Shown here: positions 1,902-39,100 of the stretch, one piece after another
Layout of the letters: every line of letters begins with the position of its first letter
Numbering within the stretch: position 1 is the first letter of the stretch
Source of the DNA: Asterias rubens
Lineage: Eukaryota
Direction: 5' to 3'
DNA: 64,000 nt
Assembly (NCBI RefSeq): GCF_902459465.1
Contig: NC_047068.1
Span: 16,430,001-16,494,000 of the forward strand
Notes under the pieces: generated by a model
Database searches by the model: none
The model's input: the letters and a program-made list of their open reading frames with translations, nothing else
What the model was told of the DNA's origin: nothing
Translations under genes and position numbers: made by a program

Positions 1902-2035
1902 TTGTCCCTGAAGACTTGGTAGGGTTGCACGATATGATCCTTGTTCTCACGGCGTAGGGCCTGTCGTAACTCAGCGTGGGGAATTGCATAACTCTTCTGA
2001 GTCTTGTACAGCTCTTCAAAGTCTGTGTTAAAACC
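1902..2035 (-). CDS. EXOC7: EXOC7 exon 21 (GFNTDFEELYKTQKSYAIPHAELRQALRRENKDHIVQPYQVFRD)
   Basis: cctcctccccag| acceptor, |gtgagt donor; matches Exo70 GFNxxxEE...AIPD...LR. Confidence 0.93.
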
Positions 2036-5000: not shown

Positions 5001-8000
5001 AATACCCCATTATCAGAGTGTCCTTCCTTGATTTTGTGTCCTGGTTTTCCATGAAATATCATCTTTGCCCAGCCAGTAATTCAAGGGCAGACCTGGTATT
5101 GGATTATGTCTATATTTTTTATTGGGTTAATAAACTAGGTCGGGCTTTGCATTATGCAGTGTTTGATGCTAACCTCAATAATATTTTATTCAGAGTTTTC
5201 TCACAAGTGAGGCGAGGGGATAATCTTTTTACGAGATATGCATTCTTCATAACACCGGGGGTAGTTTATTATTAAGATTTTAAAATGACAGAATAGCAGC
5301 TATCGCTTGTCATTCTATCAGGTCCTTCATGACCTTGCTCTTCCATCATTATATGATTTATCTGTTGCATGTTTGAGTATTCAGATGAACAACTGAAGAA
5401 AAAGATCTGTTGGCTTGTATACAACAAATCACTAAATTTCAAGCCAGTGTGCAGCTGCATCAAAGAAAGCAAACAGAGTCCTGAATCTGGATAAAGATTT
5501 TCAATGCTCCATAAAATGGCTGACCGTGTTTATTCGCGACATAAAGGAAAACTATGTAATTTTGAGGCATGTTTGTGTGGATTATTATATTCTACTTTTA
5601 CATTATCTATGTAACCATATGCATTTCGTAACAAATGGTTTCAAACGCTTTTCAAAGACCAACTCGACCGATCCAAGGAAACGTGTCCCTTTTAAATGTA
5701 TTTGAGCCAAATGAAAAGAGAGGGTGATGAATAAATTGCAGTTTTAGATATGGAAGGAAAAGCCCGAAGAATTATTCCAGGGAAAGCCAACACAGTCAGG
5801 TAGGGACTGAAAAACCCAATCCACATAGTGGCCCCAGTGGGATTCGAACTTGGGACCCAGAGGTGGAAGTCGAGGCAAGACACCACTACACCATCATGAC
5901 CTGGGGATGATCGAGGGAAGTTTGCATGTCATCTTTCAATAATATAAATCGCTTGTTCGCCCACACTTAGATGACTGTATACAGGTTTGGAGCCCCCCCC
6001 CATCTAACCAAAGACAAGAAACCTTAAAAAGATACAAGCCAATGCCACCAAACTTAACTGATAAAAAAAATAAGACAACCAGTCACAACCTATAGTAATA
6101 GTTCATTGTGTGTCAGCCCATAACCATTTCTACCATGTCAACTAAGCAAAATATCAGCAACTTTGTGCATGCGAAGAAACACACAACACTTTCTTTTGGT
6201 AAAAAAAACTAAAACACTAAAACAACTTTTTTATATTAACAATGTAAGAAAGAGATGTACAGTATCATACAAAATTTAATCAGAATTTGGTTCTAGTAAT
6301 TTTTCTATAATATATGAAATGCCATCCATATAACCTTCAAAATTGAATAGGGAAATTTAAAAATGGCTGGAGATTTCATCAGAGGAGACAGACCGATATT
6401 TGAACTGGATTTTAATTTGATAGACTCAAAATCGAGGTCATAAAGCGAACAATGTAGTTAATGAATAGTTGTATACATTCGAGTGGCTTGTTTTTAATAT
6501 CAAGTTCATTACGTTTGACTCATTTTCTATTTGATGATTGGTCAGATCTATTAAATCAGCGTTATGATCAGTGCTGTAGCCATGGTGGGTGGGTGGTGCT
6601 AGGTGGACCTGCTCAGGACTCACAACTTTTGCCTAGCACTCTCAGCAAAATACATTGACCGCCCAACACAGATTTCCCTCAAAATAGTATCCACTGTGCA
6701 TTGATCCGAGACACATCTAATGATAAGGGGTATCATATGTCACAGAGAATGAACACAGCCAAAAGGTCATTTAACTTATTGCAAGACCACATAACATGAA
6801 AACGTTTGTTGATCCAGTTGCCCTTTGTAGACTTAAACATGATTTACTGCCCACCACTGAAATTGATTGGTCTACCTACAACCATGGTCATTATTCAATT
6901 GTAATCTACCCTCAAGGCCACATTAAATGAGAAGGTACTTGTCTACTAATTAACGAGCACTCTAGTCAATCTGTTAATTAACAAACAGTGATGAATAAAC
7001 AGCTTCGGCATATTTGTCACAATAAGCAAACCACTGATTTCACAATGGCTAGAATAAAATAAGTAGTGTCAAGTTACTGAATCACAATTTTTGTGCAACT
7101 CATACATGTAGACGTTATGTTTGTACGAGAGAGATTGGCAGTTGCCAGCTTGATTTTTTTTTATATCTGAACTTGTTTACCATTATTCCCCTACTCGGAG
7201 TTTACAACCATCTCAACAGTCATTGCTTTCAATTATCTCAACAGTCACTGCTTTCAACTACTAGAACTTCTTTCATTTTTTATGGCCACATATCTTTGTC
7301 ATACATGTATACTGCACCGCTTCTTTGGAAGTCTTCCTGTGCATATTCGCCAGGCTAGTTCTTTACAATGTTTAAAGTCTCTGTTAAAAACTTATTTGTT
7401 TAAAGCTGCTTTTTTTTGTAATCTCCTAATTTGTAATTTGTATGTTTTATCTCATTATATATTTTATTGTTCTCTTTTATGTGCTTAGAGGCTTTTCGCA
7501 TTGGTCGCTTTACCAATGTCTTATTATTATTATATTATTATATCCCCTTAATTGAGTTTGCCAAGGCCCCTTTGATGGGAAGATCATCAACAAAGAGACA
7601 GACAAAGGAGAGAGCCCCAATTCATGATTGAACTGTTTGTGTTTAAGAGTAATACTAAGTGTGGAGATGAGAACAAAAGAGGTCCAAGCAACAATATAAA
7701 TACGAGAGCAGAACTCAAATGTATATAGGTTGTTATCATTGATCCAGGAAATAAAGTGAGGTCCAGTTTAAAAATAAAACCTACAGTCGCCAGAGGAGGC
7801 TGCTGGTGATAAATTGCACACTTCCAGAAGACACGCAGATACCTCCCTCTGTCTGTCCCCATTGTGGCGGGGCAACCACAGTAGCTCTATCCAACAACTT
7901 CCCCTCTATGCAAGGCAAAAGAAACACTGTCCTGGCACCATTTCCATTGACTGCACTTTGTTAATGTCCAACTCTTCACAATGAAGATTGTGGTACAATT

Positions 8001-11000
8001 TTCTTGTGGTACCATGTTCTTAAGGTACCATGTTCTTGGGGTACCATTTTCTTGTGGAACCATGTTCTTGTGGAACCATGTTCTTGTGGAACCATGTTCT
8101 TGTGGAACCATGTTCTTGTGGAACCATGTTCTTGTGGAACCATGTTCTTGTGGAACCATGTTCTTGTGGAACCATGTTCTTGTGGAACCATGTTCTTGTG
8201 GAACCATGTTCTTGTGGAGCCATGTTCTTGTGGAACCATGTTCTTGTGGAACCATGTTCTTGTGGAACCATGTTCTTGTGGAACCATGTTCTTGTGGAAC
8301 CATGTTCTTGTGGAGCCATGTTCTTGTGGAACCATGTTCTTGTGGAACCATGTTCTTGTGGAACCATGTTCTTGTGGAACCATGTTCTTGTGGAACCATG
8401 TTCTTGTGGAACCATGTTCTTGTGGAGCCATGTTCTTGTGGAACCATGTTCTTGTGGAACCATGTTCTTGCGGAACCATGTTCTTGTGGAACCATGTTCT
8501 TGTGGAACCATGTTCTTGGTGTTTCTGATCAACAGAGTGTGGGTTCTAATCCCGGTCTTGACACTTGTGTCCTTAAGCAAGACACTTAACCATCATTGCT
8601 TCGTCCTTCTGATTGCACAAACATGTAAAGCCATTGGTTCCCTGCTTTGTTTAAAGATCCCAGTAACACTTATCACTAAGAGACGGGGTTCACCCTGGTT
8701 GTTGGCAGTGGGTGCTGAATGCACTGCGAACACTTTGTGAACCCTTAAAAAGTGGTACACTATTGGGTCTCAGAATTCATAACTTCAATAACCTATCTTT
8801 CTGAAAAAAATGTATATTCTACTTAGCGCCGTGACAATGCTTGGCACCTCATTGGTAGATACGTGTGCTACATAAGACTTTGATATTAATACTATTAATT
8901 GCCAGGCCTGAAACATAATAATAGTCTCTAATGGAACACTGCCTTCAAGCCCAGCGCCCATCAAATGATTTAATAAATATTCTTCTCGGAGGGGACAAGT
9001 TTACGTTTCTGTGCTTATCAAAACTATCGGTCTCCTTTAATACTCCTCAGAGTGCAGTTAGCAATCTACCTTGACCAGGAGCGAACGCAACACAGGGGGG
9101 AAGCACGACTCACACACAGCTGGGAGCAATGGTGCGTTACAATCAACTTGGTCAACTGTTGTCGTTTTAACGAGGAGCGAGCGGCATTTGTTTGTATTAT
9201 TCCAATGTCGGCCAACCCTGGGGCCCTGTGGGATACCAGGAAATTGGACACCGACGCCATGAGCCGTGTCCAAATGACACAGAGATGAAAGATAACGGTG
9301 GGGCGTCGAGAGAAAGAGAAATGAGGTCTGAAGAAATGTGTTTTATGGTTTCAACACACAATTAAACGTTGGTTGTCTGATTTGGTGTTTGAACTTGAAA
9401 CACTATGTGGACTTAAATTTGTCCACAAAGTGTTATTTACAGTTTTGAAAGAATATGAGTTTTATGGTTTTAACACACAAGTAAACAAATGGGTATCTTA
9501 TTGTGTGTTTAAATTTGAGACACTATGTGGACTTCAGACATCCACACAGTGTTAATTACAGTGATGAAGAATATGTATTTTATGGTTTCAACAGACAATT
9601 AAATGAAAAACTTGGTTGTCTGATTGTGTTTTAACTTTTTACACTATGTGGACTTACACATGTCCACACAGTGTTAATAACAGAGATGAAGAATAGAATT
9701 TTTCTTAATTGTCCAGTACAAAGGAATGTCCTCACAGCGACTACAACATAGAGCTGTGTGCTCATTTTCAAAACCTTACAGAGACCAAGGACAAAATAAA
9801 AATGGGAAAAAAAGGACTCCGTAGGAGAATTCGAACAGCTGGGGTGCTCCACAAGGGATTTTGTGGAAGAAAAAGATGATTCCACAAGGATGCAAGGTGT
9901 TAAAGACCAGTCTTCTCACTTGGTGTATCCCATCATAGCCATAAAATAACAAGCCTGTGAAAATTTGGGCTCAATTGGTCATCGAAGTTGCGAAAAAATG
10001 AAGAAAGATAAAACACCCTTGGTGGACGAATTTGTGTGCTTTCAGATAGGAATAAAAGACTTCTAGCTAGAAGTCTTTTATCATTTTAGTGAGAAATTAC
10101 TCAAAAACTATGTTACTTCAGAGGGAGTCGTTTCCCACAATGGTTTATACTATCAACAGCTCTCCAATGCTTGTTACCAAGTCAGTTTTCAAGTTAATAC
10201 TTGTGATGAGTAATTACCAAACGTGTACCTTCCCTTTAAACAAAGGCGTTTTTACAAAAGGGATCCGGGTGTTTGACAGAGTGAGGACGTCCTTGTTTCG
10301 CTTTGTTGTACAAAACTAATAGAGATGTCGCTTAAATAACAAAGTCTGAACAGTGGGAGAACAAAGAGAAGTCATCGATTAGCGGTATTCACAACCATGT
10401 GCGTTTCTGTGTATGTGGGGGTTATCATCATATAGAAGACAAAAAATCTGCAGAATATATATTAGTTTCCATATTCCAAAACAATCAAATGAAACATCAA
10501 CTAATGCATAATTAGCCCACACATAATTTCCGCACTCAGGAAATGGACTTGATAAAAATTATGTGTACGTAAACAGTACGCACCGAGCCCAAGTTTTGAA
10601 TATGTTTCTAAGATTGGATCAGTGCAGTGAGGGGCATATGCCTGATGCAAATTTGGGGATGAGAGAGGGTGTTCAAATAAATAGAACAGTGTATAGTTGA
10701 TTTACACAGTTGGCTTCCTGACAAGGTTTGAATAAACTTTAAACTTTTACTTTTTAGAAGTTTATGTATTCTTTGCCTGGTGTAACTTTTTATTTTTGTA
10801 CAAATTATTTTGAGTTATAAACAAAGACAAATTTACTTGAGCAAGACTTGAATCAACAACCTCCGGAATAACATGCCAGCATTCTACCAAGCAAGCTGTA
10901 TCTAGCCCTATGTTTGGGGGTCTCCATATTTTGACAATTTCTTTGTTCGGGGGTGCAAGTCATACAATACAATGACCCCATGGCATCCCATGTCAAAGTT

Positions 11001-14000
11001 CAATAGGGTCAACATTGAAACATTCTAAAAACTGTACCCAATAATCTTTCACTAAGCTATTACAATGTGATGTTAGGTCTAGGTCTGACCCCTCCTTTTC
11101 AATTCAATGACCTTATTTTGACTCTGTCAAAGTTCAATAAGGTCAAAGGTGAAATTTTATCTGGTAAACCTATCATGTGATAAATATTAATCATTACAAG
11201 TGAGCCTTCCTCTTTTTTCATTGACAATGACCGCCATTGTGACCCATGTCAAAATTCATGGGTCAGTTAATTCAAACACAAGATACAGAGTATACAATTT
11301 AAATTACATACTTGATTCTGTGTTGAAATAAGAACCTTTGGATTAACGTGCCTGCGATCTACCAACTGAGCTATCTAGCCCTACATATGTTGGCAGTCAC
11401 CCTATTTTGTCAATAACTTATGCAATATCTTGTATATGTTCAAGTACATATGGTGATTTTCTTGGCCCAATCTTATGGCTTTGCTTACCACAGGATCCTG
11501 CGTTTACGGCGCACTATAAAGCAAACTTCCATGGGTTGTAAAAAAACGTTAACTCAGAATTCCACAGAGAGCAGTAAGTTCAAAGTTTAAAGTACAAATG
11601 CAGGTCAGCAATATGAACTAATCTACACAAAAATTGATACGTACATGTAACAAAAAAGTCTATCTTTCAATTTTAGCAACTAAATACAGCTTTGGCAAAA
11701 AACAGTACTTGTCATTACCTCAAGCTCAAATGCAGCGCGCCACAACAACAAAATTAATTATACAGACTAGATAACAAATCCGTCTGTCCTTGTAGCTCAA
11801 TGAATATATAATGCAATAATAAAAACCACTTACCTTCAGTTAAATCACTACAATTTCAATGCATAAATGTATTGAATTTTTACCACTCATTAAAATGTTT
11901 TAATCCAAGAAACTTTGTGACTGATCCGCTTAGCTCCACCCATCTTTGTGGCAAAAGCGTAGCGACACGTGCGCGCAAAAGCTTAGCGACATGTTGCGCG
12001 CAATAGCGAAGCGACACCTGACTAGCTCCATTAGGGACTTACATGCATTGTTCATTCGCATTCTCACAACATCATTCCCATGGATGTATGTATCAAGATT
12101 GTTGCACCTTTTTCCCAGGTCGATCATCGTGCTTGACCACAACCCATTGTTTGTCATTGTCTCTCTTCCAGGGGTTAGCGACAAGAATGATCGATACAAC
12201 ACATGGGGACGAGGTTGGCATTCTTATGGAAGTCTAATGGTTGTGCAGTCAAGATGGGATTGACCAGATCAAGATCAGGCTTAATGGATTGGTCTATTCT
12301 AAAAATAATTCAAAGAAAGTTTTTTTTTTGTTTTACCCTTACACCGATGTGCGGTAGGTCTGTAAAAAAAAAACCAGGCTTTCTAGAGCAGTGTCTTAAA
12401 AACTAGACCACCGAGATTACCTGGAAGCTAGAGGCAGTTTGAATTGCTTAACTCAGGAAAGTACTGTGTACAGTGCTATCTCACATACCAGTGTAAGGGT
12501 AAAAGCAAACTCAAATTCTTTATACCCGATGCAAATTCAATTTCTTTTTTTTTTGCAAAATGAAAATGACTCGTGCCTTGGAAAAAGTGCTGGTTAGTAA
12601 TAATGAATTAAAGTATCATTCAATATGATGAAATTTGCAATCCAATGTTGTGGGTGGCTAGAAAGGGGCAGGACTACCATGAGAACCAAAACACTTTGTT
12701 CAAATTACTTTTTTGGACAAAACTTATACATCATTTGAACATGGAAAGAAATAGATTGAATATCACATGATGTTTAGGGGTGCCTCAAAAGACGGGCAGG
12801 TTTTAGGAGCAAAGGAAGGTTCCCGTAGGCATGAACACGCAATCCAGTGGCCTGCCAGAATGTTCAGCTGGACCCTGGACTTGTAGACAAGTTGTTAAAT
12901 GTCTGTCGCGGTGATAGTGTTCCGAATCTCCCCGGGATTCCCGCGGTATTCTCCCGAGACTGCTGGCCCCGCGAGACTACTGCTCTCATGACTACGGTCC
13001 CATTTAGCAGGGGAGTAGAAGTTGGCAACCAGCAGTTCGTGCGAGAGCAGTAATCTCGCAAGAGCACGGCCACAACTCGACTATCTCACCGCGGCAGACC
13101 ATCAACAACTTGTCTACAAGTCTAGCTGGACCCCGATGTTGTGCCGTGCTACAGGAACATGCCTAGATGAAGAGAATTGATACACTGGGATTATCAATAA
13201 TCCAATGGAACAATCTCAGTAGCCCTTTCACACTGTCTCTGCCTAGATCCCTATATTCCACAGGGTTCCTTCCAGCTGCATGTTTCAACGATACCCCAGT
13301 GTTTTACCACTCACCCCTACTCCAGAGCAGGGCTAGCTATCCCCAGGGTGTGCCTATTTGCTGCAGAGTAGTAACAAGTGTGAAAGGGGCTGGGGAGGGA
13401 CAATGTAAAAAACCTGAAAGCAGTCAAAGTATTTAATCCAAACAAAACATTTCAGAGATGCATTTCTTATGCTGTTGGATGAAGAATTTTTATCATGTGT
13501 TGGTTCACATTAAAACGTGCATGGGATCAGGGCTTATGAAGAGATGCATCAACTGATAAGCGTGTGCGCTTTTTAATGTTTTTCATGAATGATGGCCAGG
13601 TAAGGGTGATATGTGATGTGACCTTTGACAAGTGATGTGACCTTTGGCATGACCTCTGACCTTGAATCTGTCCTTGATTTGTTGTCGCTCCTTTTTGTCC
13701 TTCACCTTGCCTGTTGCCTCCTGGTTTAAGTGGAGTTTGTGATTGTTATATTTAATTCTGGCAATTAAACTAAGCATGCCTATATAGGGCGAGCATAAAC
13801 CCTGAACATGTGTAGCCTACAGGCACTGGACACCTTTGGTAATTGTCAAAGACCAGGGGCCAATTTCATAGAGCTGCTAAGCACAAAAATTTGCTTAGCG
13901 TGAAATTTCTTCCTTGATAAAAACAGGATTGCCAACCAAAATTCCCATTTGTTGCATATTGCTTGATACTGGTATTCAGCTGTTGTTTGCTAATCCTGAA

Positions 14001-17000
14001 AATCACTTGGAAATTTCTTTGGTAATCCTGTTTTTATTGTGGAAGAAATTTCATACTAAGCAAATTTTTGTGTATAGCAGCTCTATGAAATTGGGCCCAG
14101 TATTCTCACTTGGTGTATCACGCATGCATAAAATATCAAATTTGTGACAATTTTGACTCAATTGGTCATCAAAAACTCCACAAGAATATTGGGAGCAAAA
14201 CCACCCTGGTTGCACAATTTGTGTGCTTTCTGACATTGTCTGAAGTCTTTTAATATTTGAGCGAGAAGTTGAATTTTTCTCAAAAACTATGTTACTTCAG
14301 AGGGAGCCGTTTCTCAAAATGTTTATGCTATCAAAAGCTCTCCATTGCTCGCTACCAAGTATGTGTCATTATGCCAACAATTTGTTTGAGTAATTACCAA
14401 TGGTGTCCACTACCTTTAAAAGCTTGAGGAATCCTAGCAAGGATCTTGCTGTCGACCAGAAAATATTTTTGGTTTCTCTGGCACTCCTTAGCTCCATAGG
14501 ACTTTTACTTTTGTTTAAATACTATCTCGGATATAAGGCACCATTTTTAGGGTGGGCAAATTGTTTGTTCCAACTGTAATTTAAATCTTAGTTCTTTCTT
14601 ACACTTACAGTTAAAAGCTTCAGATTTTACCTTCCAAACATTCCACAGCATATACATTTTAGGGTGCTAAGTTTTGGACGCCTAAATATAATTTGTAGAG
14701 TCTTTATTTCTCATAAAATATGCCATTTCAAACAGAAATATTTCAAGGGGTGTTTTCTACTATTATTTAATTGACATCCAAACCCAGTTTCATAAAATGT
14801 ATTTGGCTTTAAAGGGGAATGTCAACGAGGTGAAATTGGTAGCGTCTTAACGTTGAAACCCTTCCTCAGTGCCCAGAACTCTGTGTTTGTGTACAGCACA
14901 TGTATTCCCGTTAGGGCTAAAGCACTACCTACAGTTTATGCAACCATCTGAAGGACAAGGCAATAAGTGTTTCACACTACAGCCCCCCCCCCCCTGTAAA
15001 TGACGTCAAAAGCTCAATGGGCACTCTCACTGAGGTCACAGAGACCTTTTATCTGCTGAGAGTTGTGCCTCCTGAACATTTTTTTTTTTTTTTTTTTTTA
15101 ATTGACAAAAAGACGTGCCCTCCCAGACTTAGCTCATAAAAAGGCATGTTAAGGCCTACCAAATCAGATAGTATCTGATTTGAGAATTTTATCATTGGGG
15201 AATAGCACATAATGACATCACAATTTGAATACAGTCAATGATTGTCAATAAAATCATAGGTTGGTCTGTGAGATGTACATATTCAATCCCATCACAGGTA
15301 GGCTGTATACCAAGTTGTACATAACGCATGTGTGTGGTAATAAATTGAAATGTGCGTACATGTACATGTACCTTAAATTTATATAAAGGAGAAAAAACCT
15401 AAATATGAAATTATGGTATATGACCTGACAGATCTGTTTCAAGCACTATGGAATTTACCACACAATGAAACAGTGCAAAACAAGATTTTAAAGGCCCTGG
15501 ACACGTTTGGTAATTGTCAAAGATCAGTAATCTCCCTTGGTGTATCCATACATACAGTATGCATAAAATATCAAAAATGTAAAAACTTTGACTCAACTGG
15601 TCATCAAATTTGCACAAATTTGTGTGCTTTCAGATGCATAACATGAGACTTCAACTGAAGTTTTTAATTATTTGAGTGAGAAATTACCTTTCTCCAAAAC
15701 CACGTTTCTTTAGAGGGAGCCGTTTCTCACAATGTTTAGTACTACATGTATCAACAGCTTTCCATTGCTTGTTACCAAGTAAGATGTTATGCTAACAATT
15801 ACTTTGAGAAATTGCCAATCGTGTCCAGTGGCTTTAAGTCATAAGCTTGGAAGGCTAATCTGACAGAATTACAATTAAAAAACCTGCTGTACACAAAAAC
15901 GTTCCACTCTCAAATTCTTACAGTTCATAAAATAAACAGGAAAGCAACAAACAGCCATTAATCCTACCTTGAATTTATCTTTGATTTGCTGGCGTTCCCG
16001 GTCTTTGAGTTTGCTAGCGTCTTGGGTGACACGCTGTGTTGACATCGGCTTGTTTACTTCTAAGATATGAAACAAGACTTTGTTCCAACTGAAAGTGAAA
16101 GTAAAACGCACCCAGTGAAAAACTACTAATTTCAATTGATCGAGAAATAATGATAATTATAGTGGCTTCTTATATAGCATGCATATCCATCACTAAGTAG
16201 TACTCAGTGTGCTTTTACATACAGTATTTTTCTGCAAGGTATTTGGGACTATGTTTGAGTTATGAGACCTAATCCTTCTATATAGAACCATGTAATGGTT
16301 TACAAGGTGCTGTGGTGCAATATTCTGCCAATCAAACAGGGAACACCAGGGCGAAGCACATGACTTTTTGACATAAAGTGCACTAGTTTTTTTTATGTGC
16401 GTTCAACAACACACAGGACCAATAGCTTCACGTCTAATGGTGCAAATGGTGTTTTTAGGCCGTCACCGAGTTGCTGTCTACAGCTGCAATTGTTAAGCAA
16501 TTATTTTCTCACACTTAAGCAGCTCAATGAAATTAGGCCCTAGTATTGAACCCATCATTTGAGGAAACATGACTACCTTTTTGAATATTCTTTCTTCTGT
16601 TCACGGATGATGTCTGCATAGTGGGTCTCTATATCAGGAGTGCTGATGATGACGAGTTTCATTAACTCAGACCTGTAGCATTTTCAGAAAAATAAATAAA
16701 AATGGAGTTATAAATTTCAAGTTTTGAAAACAGTATCCTCAGTGCCAGCAATAAAATCAACAGCACGACTTATTTCATTTGGAGAAAAATACAGCATTTT
16801 TTGTTGACTAGGCACACTTTAAAAAGCTTAAAATCTGATAAAAGTCTGAAATTTATCATCCTTGCTCCCTCCGATAAACAGGGTTCAAAATTAACATTGG
16901 ACCACAGGCCACTAATGTCTATTTTACAGGTAAACTTAGGCAATTCTGTCAAAAATATCTTAATGGATTTCCTACCATGACCATCTTTATTGAAGTTGTG

Positions 17001-20000
17001 TGCAAATCTGTGGACATTTTTATTTGCACTCTTACAAATGTTGTACACATCCTTAATAAAGGTTTGGTATAGTGGTATCGTTCCTCATTTTCAACCTCTA
17101 GGACCCGGTTTAAATGATGTCAGGGCACTACTTGGATTGGGTAGTCAGTCCCTACCTGACAGCGTTGGTTTTCTGTAGAATATTTCTCTGGGGTTTTACT
17201 TGCTTTTTTTTCTCTCTCCATTAGGTTCTTGTCTCATACAGTAATAAAGTTCACTTTTCTTAGAGCCCTTGGCTTCACAATGAGAATAAATGAAATGAAG
17301 GTACTTACCTTTCCAATGACTTGAGAATATAGTGGTAGTTGTTCAGGAGGAAGATGGCTCCTAGATATTGGTCAGAATAGGTCTTAGCTTTCTGATCCAG
17401 GTTCAGACTCAGAGCTCCAAGCACCTTGGCTATGATGAAAATAAGTCAAATTTGGAAGCGTTCATAATTGGAATACAATCTAGTAGGATTTGGGGAGACA
17501 GCACATACACAAAATTCTTTTTATGAGTTGAGTTTATGAAAGGAATCAATTTACAAACTTGACGTTTCAATCCGTATTCAGGAGAAGTTCAGTATTTCTG
17601 ACGACTATCAGAGCATACTGAGATAACAAGTGTTCTACTAAGTGAGTGTGACTTTTGCTTTGTTTACAGTAAAGCTGTGTTTATGGAATTGAAAATTGTG
17701 CTAAGAGCAGCTCGGTAGAAAGAAAACATCAGGGTCGGTTTCACACAGCCTGTAAACAGATGTTTTATGCTTAAACAGCAACCCTTAGCACAGTTTCTAT
17801 TTCATGATTGCTGCTAACCATAAGCAAATAAAAAGGCACACTAGCCTGCCGGCAGTACTTTTAAACATATGAAAATCCATTGTCCAAACACACAATCATT
17901 GAATACACTTTTGCTTGAGTATTAAGCATAACAAATTTGCTTAGCAGTAAAAAGCTTTACGTTATCGGGTCCTGCTAACAGGCTTTCTGAAATTCGCCCA
18001 AGAATTTAGAAGTTACTGACAGTAAATGGTTGTGCACTTACCAACATAGATTGAAACTTTTTTCTTCTTGGCTTCGATATCCTGGTTCCTTGATGAATGG
18101 TCTGAAATTACAAGAAAAATAAATGAAATGTAACATTTTTATCTGTATGTTCACTCTGGCATCTTGTCACCGAGCATGCTTAGTTGTCTAGTGGTCAGGC
18201 CAATCTGTATGTGAATTTCGTGTTTTTTACCCCTGGTACAACGGAGCAGATAGTACATGCTTTTGTCACCAGCAAGCTTTACACATGAAATGCTAGGATA
18301 GTAACTAACCTCTTTGTCCAGTCAACATTGCAGCAGTTGTTTCAACATAATCCAGCAGATGCTCCAGGAATGTCAGTGCCTGGTGCGGAAAAACAAAACC
18401 AACGGAGGAATAAGTAACAAACAAACCCCCAAAAACTAATGTAAGTTTGACACAATGAGGCAGACATCAAGTAATTTATTTATTTGTTTATTTCGATTAA
18501 AATAAAAACATGGTCGGTAGTATCATAAAGTCTTTGTAACACTAAAAATTGTGAGCTTACAAAATCAAACATTAAGTATTACAAAGACAATCAAAATCAA
18601 AAACATAGGCTAGCCAGATATGCAGACATGCCAACCTCTGGGATCACAAAACTGTATTCTGAAACCCCAAAACCTGTATTTTGCATCAAAACCTGTATTT
18701 TTTTTAAAAACACGCGTAAACGTAGTTTTAAGCCCCGAGACAGGCAAAATAGAGAAGGTGTGAAGGCCATTTAGTTATCAAACAGCCTAATTAAACCAGT
18801 TAATTAAAACTTGAAGAAAAATAAATAAAAATAAAAATAAAAATAAAAATAAAAATAAAAATAAAAATAAAAATAAATAAAATAAAAAATAATATAAAAA
18901 ATTACAAAATTGGGCAGAGGTTTCCCTACGGGTGGTTAACCCAATGGAACAGGTTTTGTATGGGAAAAAAGATATTGATAAATCATATCTTAAAGACATT
19001 GATTAATCATATCCTATTTCATATATAAACCCTTGTCAATTAATTAAATATCATTTTCTTTGTCAAAAAAGGCAAGTACAAAACAAAACCAATTTAATTT
19101 CAATGAAGAAAAACAAAAAAAAAATCATCCCAAAAAGTTTTGTTTGTTGTATTTGGGGGCATAGTTCTTAAATTTATCTTATAAAAATCTCGCTTCAGGC
19201 GCTCTATATCTTTTGTGTCTTTATTTTGGCAAACAATTCTTTTGCAAACTCGATTCGTCCGTTCACAAAACGACCGATACCATATAAGGGCATTTGACAA
19301 CAGCGCCCTCTGTTGTTCAATGAATTGTGTAAGACTGGTTCCCTGTGAAATCGGGACGTCAGATAAACTGGAATCTACGTTGCACTCGCTCGATGTGTGG
19401 TGAAAGTTGAATAAGGAATACCCCCGTGGAATAATAGAGTTCACTGGATAATCATTATCGGCCGTAAGTAGCCGGCCGAAAACTTTGTGTCAATAAACAA
19501 AATATTGAACTTGAGTTAAAAAAGGGCACGACGGCCAACTGGGATAAAATTGTATTTGTGCGGTGGCGATGCTCAAAACCGTATTTTTTTTGCAAAACCC
19601 GTATACCCGTATTTTTTACAAAAACCTGTACGAAATACGGGAAAAACATACTAGTTGGCATGTCTGGATATGAGAAATAAACTTCTTTAGCTACCGGGCA
19701 ATTTTGGTGGTCTTGTCGGTAAGACACTGCTCTAGAATGCAAAGGGTTGTGGGTTAGAATCCCACCTGGGTAATATGCCTGGGAAAGAACTGAGTATACA
19801 GTGTTAACACTCATCGGTGTATTATGCGTAAAACCAAAATTAAAATATTAAATTTCCATGGGTCTATAGCTGTGATAGTGACACGCTGGTGTTGATAATA
19901 CTTACATTGCTGGTGAGTTCATGCACTGTACCATCCCTTGGCATGTTGGATTTATCGGGATCATTCTGAGACCAAACAAATATATATATATATTTACTTT

Positions 20001-23000
20001 ATCATAATTGTTTCCCTCCACCCAGAAATTTAAATAGGTACCGATGAGAGCTGCGATGGACTGGCGTCCTGTCCAACTAATAAGAATAATATTATTACTG
20101 CTGACTCATTATTGACTGAATTGATTAGTAGACTGAATGGTTTTAAAGTTGGACTCAAACTCTGTAATTTACAGAATGTGGGTTTGAATCCTGGCCTGGT
20201 CAGCCACGAGACTTCTGTCCTCGAGCAAGGCACTTGATCATAATTGATTCTCTCTCCCAGGAGTACAAATGGGTACTGGTGAGTATTCTGCGATGGACTG
20301 GCGTTTTGTTCAAGGAGAACACAAAAATACTTTCAGTTTAATGCCAAGGAAACCGGGTATAAACACCGGCCTGATGACCCATATTGGCTCGGGACAGACT
20401 TTACTTCACTAATTTACTGTCGCTGGATTTCTCTTTAGCAAACATGGGGCGTTTCTCAATCTCTTCAGATTGATATGGCGCATTACAAATACCTATCACT
20501 ATTATTGTTACATCCACATTGACTAGAGGCTAAGCCTGGGCTTACCTTGACAACATCAAAGAACTCTTCCAGGGCTTTAGCTCCAGTGGTCTCCAGGCTA
20601 GATATGAGTGTTGGTAATTTACCTCTTGTAGTTGGTGTTGTACCCTACCAGTAATAAATACATATGTTTTTAAATATTCTAAAAGACGAAGTTCAACTTC
20701 AATCGCAGTAATTTTGGTGCTGTTTTTCTTAACACGTAATTTTAATCATTTGTAAATAAATGTCAATATCTGTGATGCATTGATATCAAGGACATGAAGT
20801 TCCTTTTCTGGGGCGCGCTATGGAAGAAGACTTATTGCCTGTATCACAATATTTGAGGCTATGAGGTAAACAGGAAGTGTGGTATGAGATGACGAACGAA
20901 ACCACTGCCTACCTGGGACATGAAATGACAGTTGGCCAATCAGGGCCCGATGTCATAAAGCCTGTAATAAGCATAAAAACTTGCTAAGCACAGAAAAATC
21001 TTGCTTAACAGAAACTGAATGCCAAACAAAATTCCATAGAGTTTACATTGTGCCCCATTCATTTCATCAGTGTTTTCTGCTTATCAGCTTTTTGAAATTG
21101 GGCGGAGCTACGCCATGTTGGCTCTTGAATAGGTTTTGAGAGGCATGTCATGGCCTAGCGGTTAAGAGCACCAGAGTCAAACTCTGGTGTTTCCGATCAG
21201 CAGAGTGTGGGTTCAAGTCCCAGTCGTGACATCTGTGTCCTTAAGCAAGGCACTTAATCATGATGCTTTGTCCTTCGAACTGGACGTAGAACTGTGCTCC
21301 TGTGTGTTGTGTAACGCACATAAAAGAACCCAGTGCACTTCTCGAAAAGAGAAGGGATTCGCCCGGTGTTCCTGGTTTTGATTCACAGCATATTGTTCCA
21401 CAGCACCTTGTAAACCATTACATGGTGCTAAGGATTAGGTCCCACATACCTTACAGGAAATACTGTGTGTTATTGCGCCAGGACTGCACTGAGTGACGAA
21501 TATGCGCGCTATATAAGAAGCCACCACTATTATTATTATTACATATAGTATTAGTAAGTTGAATACAATGCAATGTTTGGCTGGTAACCAGTGTAGGGAG
21601 TGAAAGATGATAAGGAAAATCTTAGAAATTATGCGATCCCGAACAGGAAGCCAGAGTAATGCTTGTAGGGTAGGCGAGATATGTGATGAGTATTTGTGAT
21701 GCGATCAAAGTAAATGAGTCATATGTCGGAAATGTCATTATGGAGAAACACGCCACAACAGGCCCACAACAGGGGTGAAATTTTCAAAAATGGTTTTGAT
21801 ACAAATTTAGATGCCAAATTATATCTTACTTTATATTGGCAACTTCTTTCCTAATAAAACACATCATAAATGGGTTAAAATTAGCATGGAAAAAAATTTT
21901 GCCGATAAATGTTCAATAAACAACTCGTCTTTCATCCCTTTTTTCTCAGTTACATATCTCGTATCTTGTAGTAATTCTACTTTTACAACTTTTGAACCTG
22001 AGGTGTTATCAAAGTGGGGTTTAGAGTATCCTCTTTTCTAGCGTATCACAAAATTAAAAATTACTTGGGTTGACAGAAGAATCATGTTGCTTTATCACAT
22101 CACATTGATTAAATGGAATTGAATTAAATCAAACTTAGCAACACCAAACCCACATCAACCCTCCACTACCCAAAGTGTAAAGTCTGTCAAAAAGAAATTC
22201 ATTTAGGAAAAAAATCAAGAGATAATTTTGGGGTTGAACAAAGACAAATTTACTAGATGTGGACTCAAACCAACGCCCTTCAGATTAACGTGCCTGCGCT
22301 CTACCAACTGAACTATCTAGCCCTATGTTAGCCGTCTCCTTATTTTGTCAATATCTTTGTTCGAGGGTGCCGGTCAGAAGCCAAATAACCATTAACTGCC
22401 GTTTAGCCAGGGATCACACCAAAATTACAATACAACTGGGGAAGCATAGGCCAGGGGATCATCTTAAGGGGATGCGCGACTTTTTGTTTTTAGATATCAA
22501 CATAAACTAAAAGGGAAACTGAATGGATAAATTTAAAAGATTTTGGAGTTGAACAAAGAAAACATCAAGAGTTTAGAAGGGGGAAAAAAATCATTAGAGA
22601 GTCTTGAGGCTTACTTGTAACGTTTCTTCAAACTCCGGTCTGATTTGGCTAAGATGTTTGGCAACAGGAAACACTGTTAGGACAGCGGTGTAGTCATGCT
22701 TCAATACTGCCCTCTTTGCTGCTGAAGAGATCGCCTGTAAAAAACAAACATTTTTCAAACCATTTTTTTAAAACCATTATTTTATTTCCCTCCGCAAGTC
22801 AAGATTAATTCAAATGGGTCTTTTCTGACTCTTTTGGTGCCCATCACAAATAGACTTGAGAAGGCTAGACAGAGGTGAGAGCCACATCAAGATGAGGGCT
22901 GCTAACCCCCACATCAACTGTCACCAAGACAGAATATAATAGCATCTCAATGTAATCTTATTTTCTTCTTCCCTAATTTCACACAATTAGACAATGTAGT

Positions 23001-33195: not shown

Positions 33196-36100
33196 GTGAG
33201 TGTGTTATTTACGACCAATGTGGTTGTGGGGGAGTTAACTATTTAAACTAGTTACTTGCATAGTTCATTCATGCAGTATAAATTATGGTCATTGGGTGAC
33301 TGGTCTTGATGCATGATTGTGTTGAATAACCCACATGTCTAGTCTCTAGAGGTAACATAATCAATGTCAATGACAATTGACATGAATATCATATGGGGGT
33401 TAATAATATAAATAATACAAAAATATGTTTTTGTTTACAGTTACACAATCACAATTATGGATTATTTTAGATGGGAGTTTTTAATGTTAACTTTTTTTTC
33501 AAAATTGTCATGTCATCATGGCCTAGCGGTTAGTAGAGCACCAAATTCAAACTCTGGTGTTTCTGACCTGCAGAGTGTGGGTTCAAGTCCCAGTCGTGAC
33601 ACCTGTGTCCTTAAAAGCAAAACACTTTAACAATGATGCTCTGTTTATTGGATTCTGAGACATAAAAGCTGTTGGTTCCGTGTGTTGTGTAATGCACATG
33701 AAAGAACCCACACACTTATCAAAAAGAGAAGGGGTTTGCCCGGTGTTCCTGGTATATTACCAGCATATTGGGATAACTTTCCGTATCCTGCCAGTGCCAC
33801 CACTTGTTCACAAATTTTTACAAAAAGGGGTATCTCATTGAGGTATTTATTACATTATTTCATATCGAATGAAAAAGTGGTGCCGTGATACACAAACTTT
33901 TCTGCATAATGCACCAAAGCACCGTGTAAACTTTAACATGGTGCTACACAAACCATGTAAAAAGAGTAATTCAAATGTAGTCCCACATACATGTACCTTG
34001 CATGAAAAACTGAATGTTAAAGTGCCTTAAGTTCTGAGTGACGGATGCGCGCTACGTAAGAAGCCACTATATTAGACATACATTGTAATGTACACGTACA
34101 CAGAGTGCTTCATTGTGTACATGTACATGTACATGCAAGAGCAAACCTCAATCATATGGACCAGACAGTGTTCAGGAAGTTTAGTATTGTTTAAAATGTT
34201 GTTACAGACAGGGATGTTGATACAAGCCTTCAAACACATTAAGTAATGTACATGTAATAGGCCTAACATTGTTTCTGTTGGATTGTTTTACTGGTCATTG
34301 TAAAACATTGCACCAGTGTACTCATGGTCTATCGTCAGTTGGGCATTGTACATGGTAGATAGTACACTAAGTCTAATTGTGCAAGATGTTCTTGACATGG
34401 TTTAACCATGGTAAAAAATAGACTATTCCACCGATAGAGGGTGTATCTGTAAGCTGCGATCCCATTTTCCAGTGTTGTGTGACCTGGAAGTTTTTCTATA
34501 GCGCCCGCTAATGTTCGATAGTAATGTGCACAGCGAGGAAGGAGCGGGGCATTGCGATAGTTGAGTGATATTGTTCTAACAATGTCTTGCACTAATACTA
34601 CAAATGTACAGGTGGATACAAACAATGTAGTTGTGCAATTAATGGCTGACCCTTACCCAATGATTGAACAATCATGGACTTGTCCTTAGAGTGTAAACAT
34701 CAAAGCTGTCAGGAACCTTTTACACCATTCAGGCATTTAGCACAGGGCTCGAAGGGAAGGGGGGAATCCATATAAGACATGTAAGCTCAAAATGTCTACT
34801 TTATTTGGACTAAATGTCTATTGGACTGGAGAGTTTGTTACAAGACCGGAATGAAATTGAAGAGAACATGAACCCTTGTGCAAGACACTTTACCATTGAT
34901 AAAGTTTGGGAGGTTGCATTCTGAGCACTCTATCATAAAAATAGAACAGGAAAGACACGATGAAGAAGAAGCTCTATATGTAGGCTCCTAGTGAATCATT
35001 AGGGGGCCTAAGCCATTTTGAGATGGTCTCTAAAAAGGTTAATGAACATTTGTACATTGTACGTCCTTCAAAACATGTGAATTTATCAGATCACATGAAG
35101 TGCAGTTACCTAGTATTAACCAATGTATCACCTGTCATGCCTGCTGCCAAACAACATTCACAACAACCACAGTAGTTAGAGAGAGCTATTACAGCATAGT
35201 GTCCACAGCTTTAAGGACTAAGGGGAGAACAATTCTAAATAGTTTGTAAATTTTTCAAATTCACATTCCTTTGGATGTAGGTATGACGTTATTTCATATA
35301 GACCACCACACCCACTTGGCTCAAGTGATTATGAGAAGTCCTGTACTACATACTGTACAGTTTCTCTCCTAGTCCTAGTCATACATGTAGGACTTCTGGA
35401 TCTAAACAGCATTGATGATGTACACACACATGTCACATGGTTTGCCTTTCGTGTCTTAGGCTGGACTTAGTTTTTATAAATTGTTTGCATACATACATAC
35501 ATGTACATATTTTAGTAGAAAGATCCTTTTTCCAGGAAAATGACCTTCTTAAAGTTCCATGCATTGGAATAAAAGTACTTCACTGTACACTGTGTACGTC
35601 AAGCATTCAGTCTAAATTCTGAGTGCTTACTGAATTGCTGTACCCACAGTACAACCCATCTTCTCCACCACCTGCTTGTCTGTAGGTTTATGGCCCTGTG
35701 AGTGAATGTGCAGTCATTTTAGTGTGTAACAAACATGTAGGACTTCAGGCTTGTATGCTTTGTTTTTAAAAGGGCAAGGGCACCAAGGCATTTTCTCCTT
35801 GGTAATAAAGGGCCACCATAATAAACTGAGAAAATTGTGAATTTCTACTGGGAAATTCCCTAAAGGGTTGTACAACTTGTGCCCGACTTTGTTTTGCTAA
35901 GCATAGAATCTTGCTAAATAGTATTTTCTGCTTAGCAGCTTTTTGAACATGGGCCCTGGAGAGAGGGCTGAAAGGTTTGAAGTATGATGTAGTTTACTTA
36001 CACTACACTGTACAAATACAAATAATACAAATCTCGAGTCCCTTCCTCATCATAGAACACAGGCCAGCATTATCCCCACATGGGCTTTTTATGAAGTCCC

Positions 36101-39100
36101 AACATTCCCCAATCCAGCTTTTCAGTAGACCCAGGAACTTTTCGGTGTTGTTCTTTTCAATTAGAGACCCCCAGTGGGTGCTTGATGTCCTTTCTGATCT
36201 GATGTCCTTAGCTGTTCATAGACATGCTTGATTGATAAGTGCATCGGGCAGCGAGTCAGTGACAGCATCACTGGGATGGGAGGGTGGTTGACCTCATCTT
36301 CAACGAGTGTCACCTACTACGTGTATTTTTCTTGAGTATAAAGATTCAAAAGTTTAATAATCTCATATGACTAAATTAGTTTGACTAACTTTTCATTCTG
36401 TTATTCCCTTTCCCTATAAACAGTGCAATACAATTAAAACACCAATTTTACTCCAGATTCGTGCCGGGAGATGTGACTTTCTTACCTTTTTATCAGCGTT
36501 TTTTTTTATTTTTAAATGTTTGCCTCTTAACGTTTCGCAATTTTTAAAATGCTTTATTAAATGACTAGTGAAACTAATCGAAACATAAACGAAAATTACG
36601 TGAGTATTTGGCTGTGTTTCATAGAAAATTCATGTATAATAAATTATTAAGTTGATATTTTACCAGCCTGATGAACTTCTTTCATGATATTTATAAAAAG
36701 CATTTTTAAAACTTGCTGTGCAAAAGTTATGTAAAATTTTTTATAAAACTTGCTAATACAAAAAGAAAATTGCATACCTAGCAGTTCGGCTATGCAACAT
36801 ATTTGGACAAAATCATCCCTGTAGTATTTTTGTTGTTGGGCCTATTTGGTAAATTTTGCCCTTTTGACCATCAACCTGACGTATCGTCATCCTGATATGC
36901 TAACTTATGCACTTAAAGGAAAAACCCTAATACAGTATTAAGATGTTAACAAGTTCATCACATTACAGAATTTAATACAGACTCACCCTGTTGTCACTGG
37001 TATAAAAGGACTAAGCAGAGTACCAGTTGCACAGATAATTGTGTGACACAATCATCATCTGGTTGAGATGTTCTCTTATTAATGTGACGCTTGTGATGCA
37101 AAACTGTCGAGCATCAAAATCATCACATAAGGCCGAATGTCCTGTCAAACATTTTATGAAATCACTAAATGTTTCACAGTGTGGTGAAATGTTGGACAAT
37201 CCCTGTTGAAGCATGATAAACATGCTTTTTGTATCAACTCTTAAGGCAATGATATTAAAAACAGATCATCACGCACATTTGTATTGTGCATTTCATTGTA
37301 TGCATTGAGTTATTCACTTCAAAATATGTCGCTAGACTTTCCTACAGTACGTACAATGTAAACATCTATGTTGTAAAATTAAAGAAAATGGCCCTGCCCT
37401 TTTGGTTGAGTTTCACTGTCTGTGTGGACGGAATATTGTCAGGTTTTGAACATCTTCAATATTTTTTCAAGCAAACTTGAAGTTTTGATTCTGATAGGTC
37501 GCTCCATAGCAAGAGTGTGATATAAACCTTAGGTCTTTATCAAACATTGGTCAGCCTCAGGCGAAGGCTCGCAGCTCGGTCTTTAACCTGCATTTTGGAG
37601 CAGCGCGTATTGCTCGAACATCATTGTAGCCCTAGCCGAGGTTTGAGAAAGGTCCCTTACAACAAAACAGCCCACATCAAACATTGTTACATGTATATTG
37701 TACAAAGCACTAACATTTTGTGTGGCAAGTAGCTACATGTAGGTGGTTTCTCATTTTAAAAAAGTGATTAAACAAATTATAATAATTCTTGTTTGTATTT
37801 ATTGTACAGGCGGACTCAGTCAAGTACTTCTTAAATGAATTGGATCGGATAGGAAACAAGGTAAGACACTAGAATGCAGACCGAGCTTTTCCTTGTAACT
37901 CGAGCCACCATCTTGTGTTTTCTGATCTTGTGTTTTCTGGGGACCTTACATGTATAATGACATAATTACCAAACGTGTACCTTCCCTTTAAGAGCAAAGA
38001 ACTATACTATAATTGCTTCTCTCCACCCAGGAGTAGAAATGGGCACCAGCGAGAGCTGGGATTAATCTGCGATGGACTGGCATCCTGTCCTGTGGAATAG
38101 TAGTATACAAATATTGAGTGGCTTAGAGTGGAATGGAAGGAATATTATCGCTCGGTAAAATTTGGACTGTTCCAATATTATCGCTCGGTAAATTTTGGAA
38201 CAGTCCAAATTTTACCGAGCGATAATATTCCTTCCATTCCACGAATTAAAGCCACTCAATATTTGCTGTATATAACTGACATATAGAGATCCTTGTCATT
38301 TGATGTATTTTAAAAGTATAACATGAAAAATCACACAAATTACTGACATCCAAAAATCATATAGCGCCGCATAGCGGCAACAATGCACAAATCAGATCAC
38401 AACCTTTTGCACACGTGCTCCTTTGTTTTAGCGGCGGCACTGTACATGTACTGCTCAAAAACATTGGGAACAAGGATGATCCTAACTGTTGAATGGGAAA
38501 TGCTATTCCCCATGGGCGAATACACTGTAGGTCTTTTTGATCGCCGGTGCGGATGGGAGTAATAGTGTATGTCACGTGAAGTAAGTTCCACCAATCAAAT
38601 GACAAGGATCTGTATGTCAGTTATATAATTAAAAATATTCTCAGTCGTTTTATACAAGGAGAATGAACGAGAGGGTGTACGTAGATTCGTGGATAAAATT
38701 TGTACGAGACAAGGGAACAAATCTACACTTTAGAGTCTATTTTCTGACTTAAACTATTTCCCAAATGATTATGTAACAGTTTCAAGGAATTTGATGTCAC
38801 ATAAATAATAACAACACTTAATTATTCTACCTTATTTCTTGTACTTTGTCAAACCGCGATTATCAGGCATACTTTATAGTGCTACTGCTTGCAACACTAT
38901 CAAGTGCATTGTCAGATTGAAAGGTTAACAATAAATTGTGTTCGCAAAAGTGTTTATTGCCATACATTTTTAGAATTATCACCAGTATATCTTCCCCTTC
39001 AGTTTTTTAAATATATTTATAGTAATATCTTTTGTGTTTATCTTTGCGATTAATTTGCAGGATTATCTCCCCACAATGAAGGATATCCTCTTTGCCAGGA

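What the first reader, a model, noticed from the sequence alone, without database searches (positions are those of the whole stretch)
13661..13757. Synonymously diverged duplicate of EXOC7 exon 20: candidate mutually exclusive exon
2.2 kb downstream of exon 20, a second segment encodes KVKDKKERQQIKDRFK (exon 20: KLKDRERQQIKDKFK) and ends at the same codon with AAG|GT. Over the last 10 codons the changes are gaa/gag, cgc/cga, cag/caa, aaa/aag and gat/gac (all silent) plus aaa/aga (K>R). That pattern points to purifying selection on a coding copy rather than neutral decay. With the ttaattgccag acceptor at 13757 the exon is 97 nt and phase 2-0 like exon 20. Including both would then frameshift, which is the classic signature of mutually exclusive exons. 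A weaker acceptor at 13720 would instead give a 60-nt in-frame cassette repeating the basic helix. This lies in the basic C-terminal region of Exo70, whose C-terminal domain is known to bind PI(4,5)P2. I know of no described alternative splicing here; the described vertebrate EXOC7 isoforms vary in the mid-protein linker.
Basis: partly seen in the sequence, partly recalled or inferred. Interest (0 to 1): 0.7.

Follow-up and report, generated by a model that had tools for sequence, protein, structure and literature searches.

The report
Sea-star EXOC7 duplicated 60-nt cassette exon
The flagged segment is a real alternatively spliced 60-base exon of the sea-star Exo70 (EXOC7) gene, born from a partial copy of the exon before it. 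It is added to that exon, not swapped for it, and both forms are already in public RefSeq models, so it is modestly interesting.

Summary
On the minus strand, 13661-13708 is a diverged copy of the last 15 codons of EXOC7 "exon 20" (15968-16012). It lies 2.2 kb downstream and ends at a GT donor. Over the last 10 codons there are 5 silent changes and 1 replacement.

The main interpretation, a 97-nt mutually exclusive exon, is wrong. The exon is a 60-nt in-frame cassette (13661-13720, acceptor cag|G at 13720) spliced between exon 20 and exon 21.

- **Public gene models:** RefSeq isoform X1 (707 aa) of Asterias rubens and A. amurensis contains exactly the 20 residues EATGKVKDKKERQQIKDRFK after ...KDKFK. 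Isoform X2 (687 aa) lacks exactly these residues.
- **RNA evidence:** An RNA contig of 112 nt fits only exon 20 (29 nt) + cassette (60 nt) + exon 21 (23 nt).
- **Conservation:** Patiria miniata has the orthologous 63-nt cassette. Its core is 44/48 nt identical to Asterias, against 33/45 for the exon 20 core, and the donor and about 40 nt of downstream intron are also conserved.
- **Distribution:** No such copy exists in the same intron of a brittle star, sea urchin, sea cucumber or crinoid.

The cassette is therefore specific to sea stars among the classes sampled. Its function is inferred only: it lengthens a basic loop in the lipid-binding C-terminal domain. The scan's only other note on it is this same stretch read again.

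The parts
16577..16670 (-). EXOC7 constitutive exon ('exon 19'), ends ...TCA AAA AG|gtagtc (phase 2)
   Evidence: Sequence. RNA contigs X1 record 6 and X4 record 11 join 16577 to 16088. tblastn of P0002 residues 537-568.
15968..16088 (-). Constitutive 'exon 20' (121 nt), encoding WNKVLFHILEVNKPMSTQRVTQDASKLKDRERQQIKDKFK. Its last 45 nt (15968-16012) are the parent of the duplicate.
   Evidence: RNA contigs in X1 and X4 both stop at 15967, as expected if two continuations follow this exon.
13721..15967 (-). Intron of 2247 nt between exon 20 and the cassette. It holds SINE-like repeat copies (about 13821-14420 and 15489-15838) that are very abundant in RNA runs.
   Evidence: Repeat families D2, D3, D5, D8, D11, D12, D15 and D19. 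Contig depths of 10^4-10^5 and repeat-type joints and loose ends at 13821-14324.
13661..13720 (-). Alternative 60-nt in-frame cassette exon encoding EATGKVKDKKERQQIKDRFK. The acceptor is aaaccag|G and the donor is AAG|gtcagaggt.
   Evidence: These are exactly residues 610-629 of RefSeq isoform X1 (P0002, P0083) and exactly what isoform X2 (P0084, P0085) lacks. tblastn places them at 13720-13661 with 100% identity. X4 contig record 7 and X1 record 5 start their match at 13719 after 30 other letters, which fits the k=31 simulation.
13661..13708 (-). Duplicated core within the cassette (KVKDKKERQQIKDRFK), paralogous to 15968-16012
   Evidence: It is 44/48 nt identical to the Patiria miniata cassette core.
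13616..13660 (-). Conserved downstream intronic element: donor gtcagaggt plus three AGGTCA motifs within about 45 nt
   Evidence: The local alignment of Asterias with Patiria runs on past the donor (score 99, against a background maximum of 31). AGGTCA is expected 0.019 times per 60 nt on this strand. Direct repeat D9.
13721..13757 (-).
   Evidence: Contigs do not match beyond 13719/13720. A 97-nt form would give a 150-nt specific contig, not 112 nt. It is absent from the RefSeq proteins and not conserved in Patiria.
1902..2035 (-). Next constitutive exon ('exon 21'), GFNTDFEELYKTQKSYAIPHAELRQALRRENKDHIVQPYQVFRDK, reached after an 11.6-kb intron
   Evidence: Sequence; tblastn.

Best explanation
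The window carries the Exo70/EXOC7 gene of a sea star. It matches Asterias rubens at the three residues that separate the two Asterias RefSeq proteins.

In an ancestor of sea stars, the last ~48 nt of exon 20 were copied into the following intron. The copy now has its own splice sites: a weak acceptor (A-rich tract, ccag|G) and a weak donor (AAG|GTCAGA). It is a 60-nt cassette exon (63 nt in Patiria).

When skipped (isoform X2, 687 aa), exon 20 joins exon 21. When included (isoform X1, 707 aa), the protein reads ...KLKDRERQQIKDKFK-EATGKVKDKKERQQIKDRFK-GFN..., so the basic motif occurs twice in tandem, in frame.

Shown here: the exon's borders, both isoforms, in-frame conservation over the Asterias-Patiria distance, and stronger nucleotide conservation than in the parent exon, including synonymous sites and the downstream intron. 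That pattern is typical of regulated alternative exons.

Inferred from AlphaFold models: the cassette copy, which abuts GFN, takes over as the start of the conserved domain-D helix. The exon 20 copy is pushed into the preceding flexible loop. The fold is kept, and the loop grows from about 20 to about 40 residues and gains net charge +4.

Domain D of Exo70 binds PI(4,5)P2 through basic residues. The most likely effect is therefore a tuning of membrane or partner binding by the exocyst. I put about 0.35 on that last step.
For: - **Gene identity:** P0002 carries Pfam Exo70_N and Exo70_C and matches mouse Exo70 2pft at E 1.8e-43. Exons of P0083 map along 31317-1902 on the minus strand.
- **Isoforms:** Cluster members XP_033630890 and XP_071797550 (707 aa, X1) and XP_033630891 and XP_071797551 (687 aa, X2) differ by exactly the 20 cassette residues.
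- **RNA contigs:** X4 contig record 7 (112 nt, depth 26.9) matches 13660-13719 at its positions 31-90. X1 record 5 matches 13611-13719 from its position 31. The constitutive contigs end at 15967.
- **Simulation:** With k=31, only exon 20 + 60 nt + exon 21 gives a 112-nt specific stretch (29+60+23). Exon 19 + 60 nt gives 113 nt, and the 97-nt forms give 150 nt.
- **Raw reads:** In X11 the bin 13546-13739 is covered (about 3x mean). The intron bins 13158-13545 are at 0.
- **Orthologue:** Patiria X1 (P0086) has EQFTYKVKDKKERQQIKDIFK at L001:38591-38653, 2.6 kb after its exon 20, with the same ccag|G and AAG|gtcagaggt.
- **Conservation:** The cassette core is 44/48 nt identical (3 synonymous, 1 replacement). 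The exon 20 core is 33/45 (8 synonymous).
- **Absence elsewhere:** No copy is found in the same intron of Amphiura, Diadema, Holothuria or Antedon.
- **Structure models:** In X2 the helix 598-622 is confident. In X1 the helix 618-642 is confident, while 581-596 and 606-614 have pLDDT below 50.
- **Lipid binding of domain D:** PMC8440521 and PMC3248907.
Against: - I never saw the letters of the unmatched ends of the two contigs. The junctions are inferred from lengths and offsets.
- Junction reads from the raw runs were not among the rows shown, because repeats filled the tables.
- In X1 the contig runs through the cassette donor into the intron, so full inclusion in that run is not shown.
- Inclusion levels are rough: X4 26.9 against 28.8; X1 11.5 against 61.1; X11 about 10x against about 18x.
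- The tissue and stage of every run are unknown to me.
- RefSeq X1/X2 are automatic models.
- The functional step rests on low-confidence parts of predicted models.
- The lysines shown to matter for lipid binding (K632, K635 in mouse) lie in the last exon, not in the cassette.
- Absence outside sea stars rests on one genome per class. Acanthaster could not be checked.
Confidence: 0.85

Rival explanations
1. One reading: a 97-nt exon (13661-13757) spliced from exon 19 in place of exon 20, giving a mutually exclusive pair.
For: The 97-nt stretch is open in the right phase, has a cag acceptor, and has the same length class as exon 20 (97 and 121 are both 1 mod 3).
Against: Homology to exon 20 covers only about 48 nt. 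Both RNA contigs leave the genome at 13719/13720. The predicted specific contig would be 150 nt, not 112 nt. All three sea-star X1 proteins carry exon 20 and the copy together. The extension is not conserved in Patiria. It would also replace the strongly conserved SWNKVL... segment (W570 and V573 are invariant) with unrelated residues.
Confidence: 0.03
2. The cassette is spliced in but is functionally neutral: a tolerated relic of a duplication with no role of its own.
For: No functional data exist. The first 4-5 codons differ freely between Asterias (EATG) and Patiria (EQFTY). AlphaFold places the extra residues in a low-confidence loop.
Against: The core is 92% identical in nucleotides between two sea-star orders, while the parent exon is 73% identical and the surrounding intron does not align (background local scores of 31 or less against 99). 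The frame is kept (60 against 63 nt). The splice sites and a downstream intronic element are conserved.
Confidence: 0.1
3. The main product is a transcript that enters the cassette and does not use its donor. This is either an alternative last exon or a retained intron. It would give a protein ending ...DRFKVRGHAKGHITCQRSHHISPLPGHHS* that lacks the C-terminal lipid-binding end.
For: X1 contig record 5 runs from the exon 20 junction through 13661 to 13611. Low-depth contigs continue at 13371-13609 and 11835-12689. The ORF 13583-13777 is open to a stop at 13583-13585.
Against: Those downstream contigs have a depth of only 4-6, against 61 for the exons in the same run. That fits unfinished splicing of an 11.6-kb intron. 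X11 has no reads at 13158-13545. The X4 contig leaves the genome at 13660. No public protein model ends this way.
Confidence: 0.04

Closest known systems
Alternative exons created by tandem exon duplication (described by Kondrashov and Koonin 2001 and Letunic et al. 2002; cited from my own knowledge)
   Same: There is a diverged copy of an exon in the adjacent intron, on the same strand, kept in frame, under purifying selection and alternatively spliced.
   Different: The classic cases copy a whole exon and are mutually exclusive. Here only the last ~16 codons were copied, and the copy is a cassette added after its parent, so the protein carries a tandem repeat of the motif.
Vertebrate EXOC7 epithelial and mesenchymal isoforms (ESRP-regulated cassette in the mid-protein linker; named in reviews found; details from my own knowledge)
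   Same: Alternative in-frame cassette exons in the same gene change Exo70 behaviour without changing the rod-like fold.
   Different: The position differs (linker between the N-terminal and middle domains, against domain D). The origin is unrelated, with no duplication. The lineage differs. The vertebrate and amphioxus proteins retrieved here have no insertion at the sea-star site.
Exo70 domain D basic patch that binds PI(4,5)P2 (mouse K632/K635; PMC8440521)
   Same: The cassette lies in the same C-terminal domain, is rich in Lys and Arg (8 basic and 4 acidic residues), and sits before the helix that begins KERQ.IK..FKGFN.
   Different: The experimentally defined lysines are in the last exon (EKYIKY; SKYMKL in the sea star). 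No experiment links the duplicated segment to lipid binding.

Membership tests
Exo70 / EXOC7 exocyst subunit | Exo70_N (PF20669) and Exo70_C (PF03081) domains over the full length | tested here: met
   Precomputed Pfam hits for P0002 and all relatives. The window encodes P0083 exon by exon.
Exo70 / EXOC7 exocyst subunit | Sequence homology to solved Exo70 structures | tested here: met
   Mouse 2pft E 1.8e-43. Arabidopsis 4rl5, 7pp2 (an Exo70 family protein) and yeast 2pfv, 2b1e and 5yfp_G also match.
Mutually exclusive exon pair | The two exons are never joined in one mRNA; one or the other is used | tested here: not met
   RefSeq X1 of three species has both in tandem. The contig arithmetic requires exon 20 upstream of the cassette.
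Mutually exclusive exon pair | Homology over the whole exon, with matching length and phase | tested here: not met
   Similarity covers only about 48 of 121 nt. The real exon is 60 nt, phase 0-0, against 121 nt, phase 2-0.
Alternative cassette exon | Both included and skipped mRNAs exist | tested here: met
   X1 against X2 in A. rubens and A. amurensis. Contigs branch after 15968. The cassette contig is present in X4 and X1.
Alternative cassette exon | Canonical AG/GT borders and a length divisible by three | tested here: met
   ccag|G ... AAG|gt; 60 nt in Asterias and 63 nt in Patiria.
Alternative cassette exon | Regulated (tissue- or stage-specific) inclusion | not testable with these tools
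   Run labels are coded and only one read-laying run was allowed. The rough inclusion estimates differ between runs.
Exon born by tandem duplication | Paralogous similarity beyond chance, on the same strand, in the adjacent intron | tested here: met
   It is the only hit in the 64-kb window (E 4.8e-4), with 24/30 nt identity in the last 10 codons.
Exon born by tandem duplication | Present in one lineage and absent from the same intron in outgroups | tested here: met
   Present in Asterias and Patiria. Absent in Amphiura, Diadema, Holothuria and Antedon, one genome each.

The most novel reading that the evidence does not exclude
Sea stars evolved a regulated switch that doubles a basic motif at the entrance of the Exo70 lipid-binding domain. 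Inclusion would be controlled through the conserved AGGTCA-repeat element just after the weak donor. It would change how strongly or where the exocyst docks on PI(4,5)P2-rich membrane, for example in secretory tissues such as tube-foot adhesive glands or in oocytes and embryos.
Probability: 0.25. Interest if true: 0.45.

Novelty: new member of a known kind. Interest (0 to 1): 0.3.

Why it matters
It is a clean, datable example of how a partial exon duplication becomes a conserved alternative exon without breaking a helical fold. The copy takes over the structural role and the original is released into a loop. For exocyst biology it offers a natural variant of the membrane-binding end of Exo70 in species that suit embryology (Patiria, Asterias). 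Its weight is limited. The exon and both isoforms are already in RefSeq, the kind of event is well known, and no function is shown.

Tried and rejected
- **Retrocopy or processed fragment:** Rejected. After AAG the copy continues gtcagagg, not the exon 21 sequence GGTTTTAAC.
- **Chance match in Lys-rich sequence:** Rejected by the window-wide tblastn and by the Patiria orthologue.
- **Part of the neighbouring SINE-like repeat:** Rejected. The repeat boundary lies at about 13821 (loose ends; family D19), and the other repeat copies in the window carry no such segment.
- **Exon 19 joined to the cassette:** Rejected. It puts a stop codon in frame, and the predicted contig is 113 nt, not 112 nt.
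- **Looking for more carriers of the cassette:** A word search on the 60-residue region returned only Asterias, Patiria and the Acanthaster X2 form that lacks it.
- **Loci not on record:** Acanthaster and Strongylocentrotus loci could not be fetched.
- **Literature:** No paper on this exon was found. Liu et al. 2007 could not be read. A search for K571A found nothing. I therefore make no claim about that residue.
- **Read tables:** The single read-laying run was flooded by repeat-derived joints, so raw junction reads were not displayed.
- **Earlier notes of this scan:** They held only this same finding and an unrelated GID4 note.

Full report
**What is in the sequence**

The gene runs on the minus strand.
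- Exon 19 (16577-16670) ends ...TCAAAAAG|gtagtc.
- Exon 20 (15968-16088, 121 nt) encodes xWNKVLFHILEVNKPMSTQRVTQDASKLKDRERQQIKDKFK and ends AAG|gtagga.
- Exon 21 begins at 2035 with GGTTTTAAC (GFN...).
- At 13661-13720 the strand reads cag|GAGGCAACAGGCAAGGTGAAGGACAAAAAGGAGCGACAACAAATCAAGGACAGATTCAAG|gtcagaggt.

The last 16 codons of this segment (KVKDKKERQQIKDRFK) parallel the last 15 codons of exon 20 (KLKDRERQQIKDKFK). The last 10 codons differ by five silent changes and one K>R, with 24/30 nt identical. In a tblastn of the cassette peptide against the whole window, exon 20 is the only hit besides the cassette itself (E 4.8e-4; next hits E above 2). The similarity stops at the donor. It does not continue into exon 21 sequence, so the segment is not a retrocopy. 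It also does not reach upstream of about 13712.

**Which exon is really used**

A 54-residue exon of the window (22597-22758) was searched against the representative protein library. It returned a 707-aa Exo70 (P0002). Its sequence reads ...KLKDRERQQIKDKFKEATGKVKDKKERQQIKDRFKGFNTDFEEL....

Its 90% cluster holds four RefSeq proteins:
- "exocyst complex component 7-like isoform X1" of Asterias amurensis and A. rubens (707 aa);
- "isoform X2" of the same two species (687 aa).

X2 lacks exactly EATGKVKDKKERQQIKDRFK and nothing else in this region. tblastn places those 20 residues at 13720-13661 with 100% identity. The window agrees with the A. rubens protein at the three residues that distinguish the two species. 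The exon is therefore 60 nt, in frame, and sits between exon 20 and exon 21.

**RNA evidence**

Two RNA runs kept as contigs (X1, X4) hold half of the sampled words of 13655-13765. When laid on 11800-17600:
- X4 contig record 7 (112 nt, depth 26.9) matches 13660-13719 at its positions 31-90.
- X1 record 5 (139 nt, depth 11.5) matches 13611-13719 from its position 31.
- The constitutive contigs (X1 record 6, X4 record 11) join 17307-17430, 16577-16670 and 15967-16088. Both end at 15967, as expected if two continuations follow exon 20.

I simulated which 31-mers are specific to each possible isoform.
- Exon 20 + 60 nt + exon 21 gives a 112-nt stretch made of 29 + 60 + 23 nt.
- Exon 19 + 60 nt gives 113 nt.
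- Either 97-nt form gives 150 nt.

So does the offset, in which the shared G is counted with the exon 20 side and one G of exon 21 matches 13660.

In the raw-read run X11, the bin that holds the cassette is covered. Its mean of about 3 over 194 nt amounts to about 10x over 60 nt, against about 18x for exon 20. The intron bins 13158-13545 are empty.

There are four limits to this evidence.
- I could not see the unmatched contig letters.
- Raw junction rows were crowded out by repeat-derived joints.
- In X1 the contig runs through the donor into the intron, which I read as unfinished splicing of the 11.6-kb intron.
- Inclusion levels are only rough.

**Conservation and age**

Patiria miniata isoform X1 (P0086, 711 aa) has ...KLKDKERQQIKDKFKEQFTYKVKDKKERQQIKDIFKGFN.... 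In its locus L001, exon 20 ends at 35984, the cassette is 38591-38653 (63 nt), and exon 21 starts at 47795. The layout is the same as in Asterias, and the borders ccag|GAG and AAG|gtcagaggt are the same.

Both cassettes share V for L and the extra K (KDKKERQQ). The duplication therefore predates the split of the two orders.

Conservation between Asterias and Patiria:

| Segment | Nucleotide identity | Synonymous changes | Replacements |
|---|---|---|---|
| Cassette core | 44/48 | 3 | 1 |
| Exon 20 core | 33/45 | 8 | 1 |
| Whole exon 20 | 86/120 | 14 | 9 |

A local alignment of the cassette with 400 nt of flank on each side scores 99, against at most 31 for other Patiria intron pieces. It runs about 45 nt past the donor, through three AGGTCA motifs (expected 0.019 per 60 nt). 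Low synonymous divergence plus conserved flanking intron is the usual mark of a regulated alternative exon.

The same intron has no such copy in the other classes sampled.
- Amphiura filiformis: 14.5-kb intron.
- Diadema setosum: 2.8-kb intron.
- Holothuria leucospilota: 0.7-kb intron.
- Antedon mediterranea: 0.15-kb intron.

The retrieved proteins of urchins, crinoids, holothurians, a hemichordate, amphioxus and fishes show no insertion there either.

**How it probably works**

The region aligns to mouse Exo70 (2pft) residues KLRD-KERQMIKERFKGFN. HMMER aligns the cassette copy, not the exon 20 copy, with the mouse helix.

AlphaFold models built on a 25-sequence alignment give the following.
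- For X2: a confident helix 598-622 (DRERQQIKDKFKGFNTDFEELYKTQ), preceded by a loop with pLDDT below 50 only at 581-588.
- For X1: the equivalent confident helix is 618-642 (KKERQQIKDRFKGFN...). The exon 20 copy falls in a stretch with pLDDT below 50 at 581-596 and 606-614, with only a weak short helix at 599-610.

The inference is that the copy next to GFN takes the structural place of the original. The original joins the preceding loop, which doubles in length and gains 8 basic and 4 acidic residues.

The C-terminal domain of Exo70 binds PI(4,5)P2 through basic residues, and K632A/K635A abolish membrane binding (PMC8440521; PMC3248907). Those lysines lie in the last exon, not in the cassette. 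An effect on membrane or partner binding is therefore a hypothesis, not a result.

**Comparison and verdict**

This is an alternative cassette exon born by partial tandem exon duplication. That is a known kind of event, though the textbook cases are whole-exon, mutually exclusive pairs.

The exon and both isoforms are already in RefSeq for three species. I found no paper about them. The earlier notes of this scan contain only this same finding read again. Interest is modest.

Noticed in passing
window 13616-13660 (- strand); L001:38654-38695: Three AGGTCA motifs, each resembling a 5' splice site (AAG|GTCA), lie directly after the cassette donor. They are conserved between Asterias and Patiria. 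This may be an intronic splicing control element or decoy donors.
   Followed up: partly
window 7876-8598: A tandem array of a 16-nt unit (about 45 copies, about 95% alike) lies inside the 11.6-kb intron. It produces long spurious ORFs in all frames.
   Followed up: no
window 9898-10240, 14088-14420, 15489-15838, with fragments at 13818-13856 and 2448-2523: Copies of one SINE-like interspersed repeat. RNA runs hold it at contig depths of 10^4-10^5 and show many repeat-to-repeat joints, so the family is highly transcribed or sits in many transcripts.
   Followed up: partly
window 13371-13660 and 11835-12689: In run X1, low-depth contigs (4-6, against 61 for the exons) cover the intron downstream of the cassette. 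One contig reads from the exon 20 junction through the cassette donor. This is probably a splicing intermediate, with the 2.2-kb intron removed before the 11.6-kb one.
   Followed up: partly
window 16040 and 16067 (exon 20): Every RNA run with reads there (X1, X4, X11 and 2 reads in X12) reads C and G where the window has T and A. Both sites are third codon positions, so these look like strain polymorphisms of the assembled individual.
   Followed up: no
L001:6342-8112 and 11331-15018 (Patiria miniata): Two G-alpha genes (PF00503) are called on the same strand inside the span of the Patiria EXOC7 gene model. They are either nested genes in an early intron or a sign that the model's first exon is placed too far upstream.
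   Followed up: no
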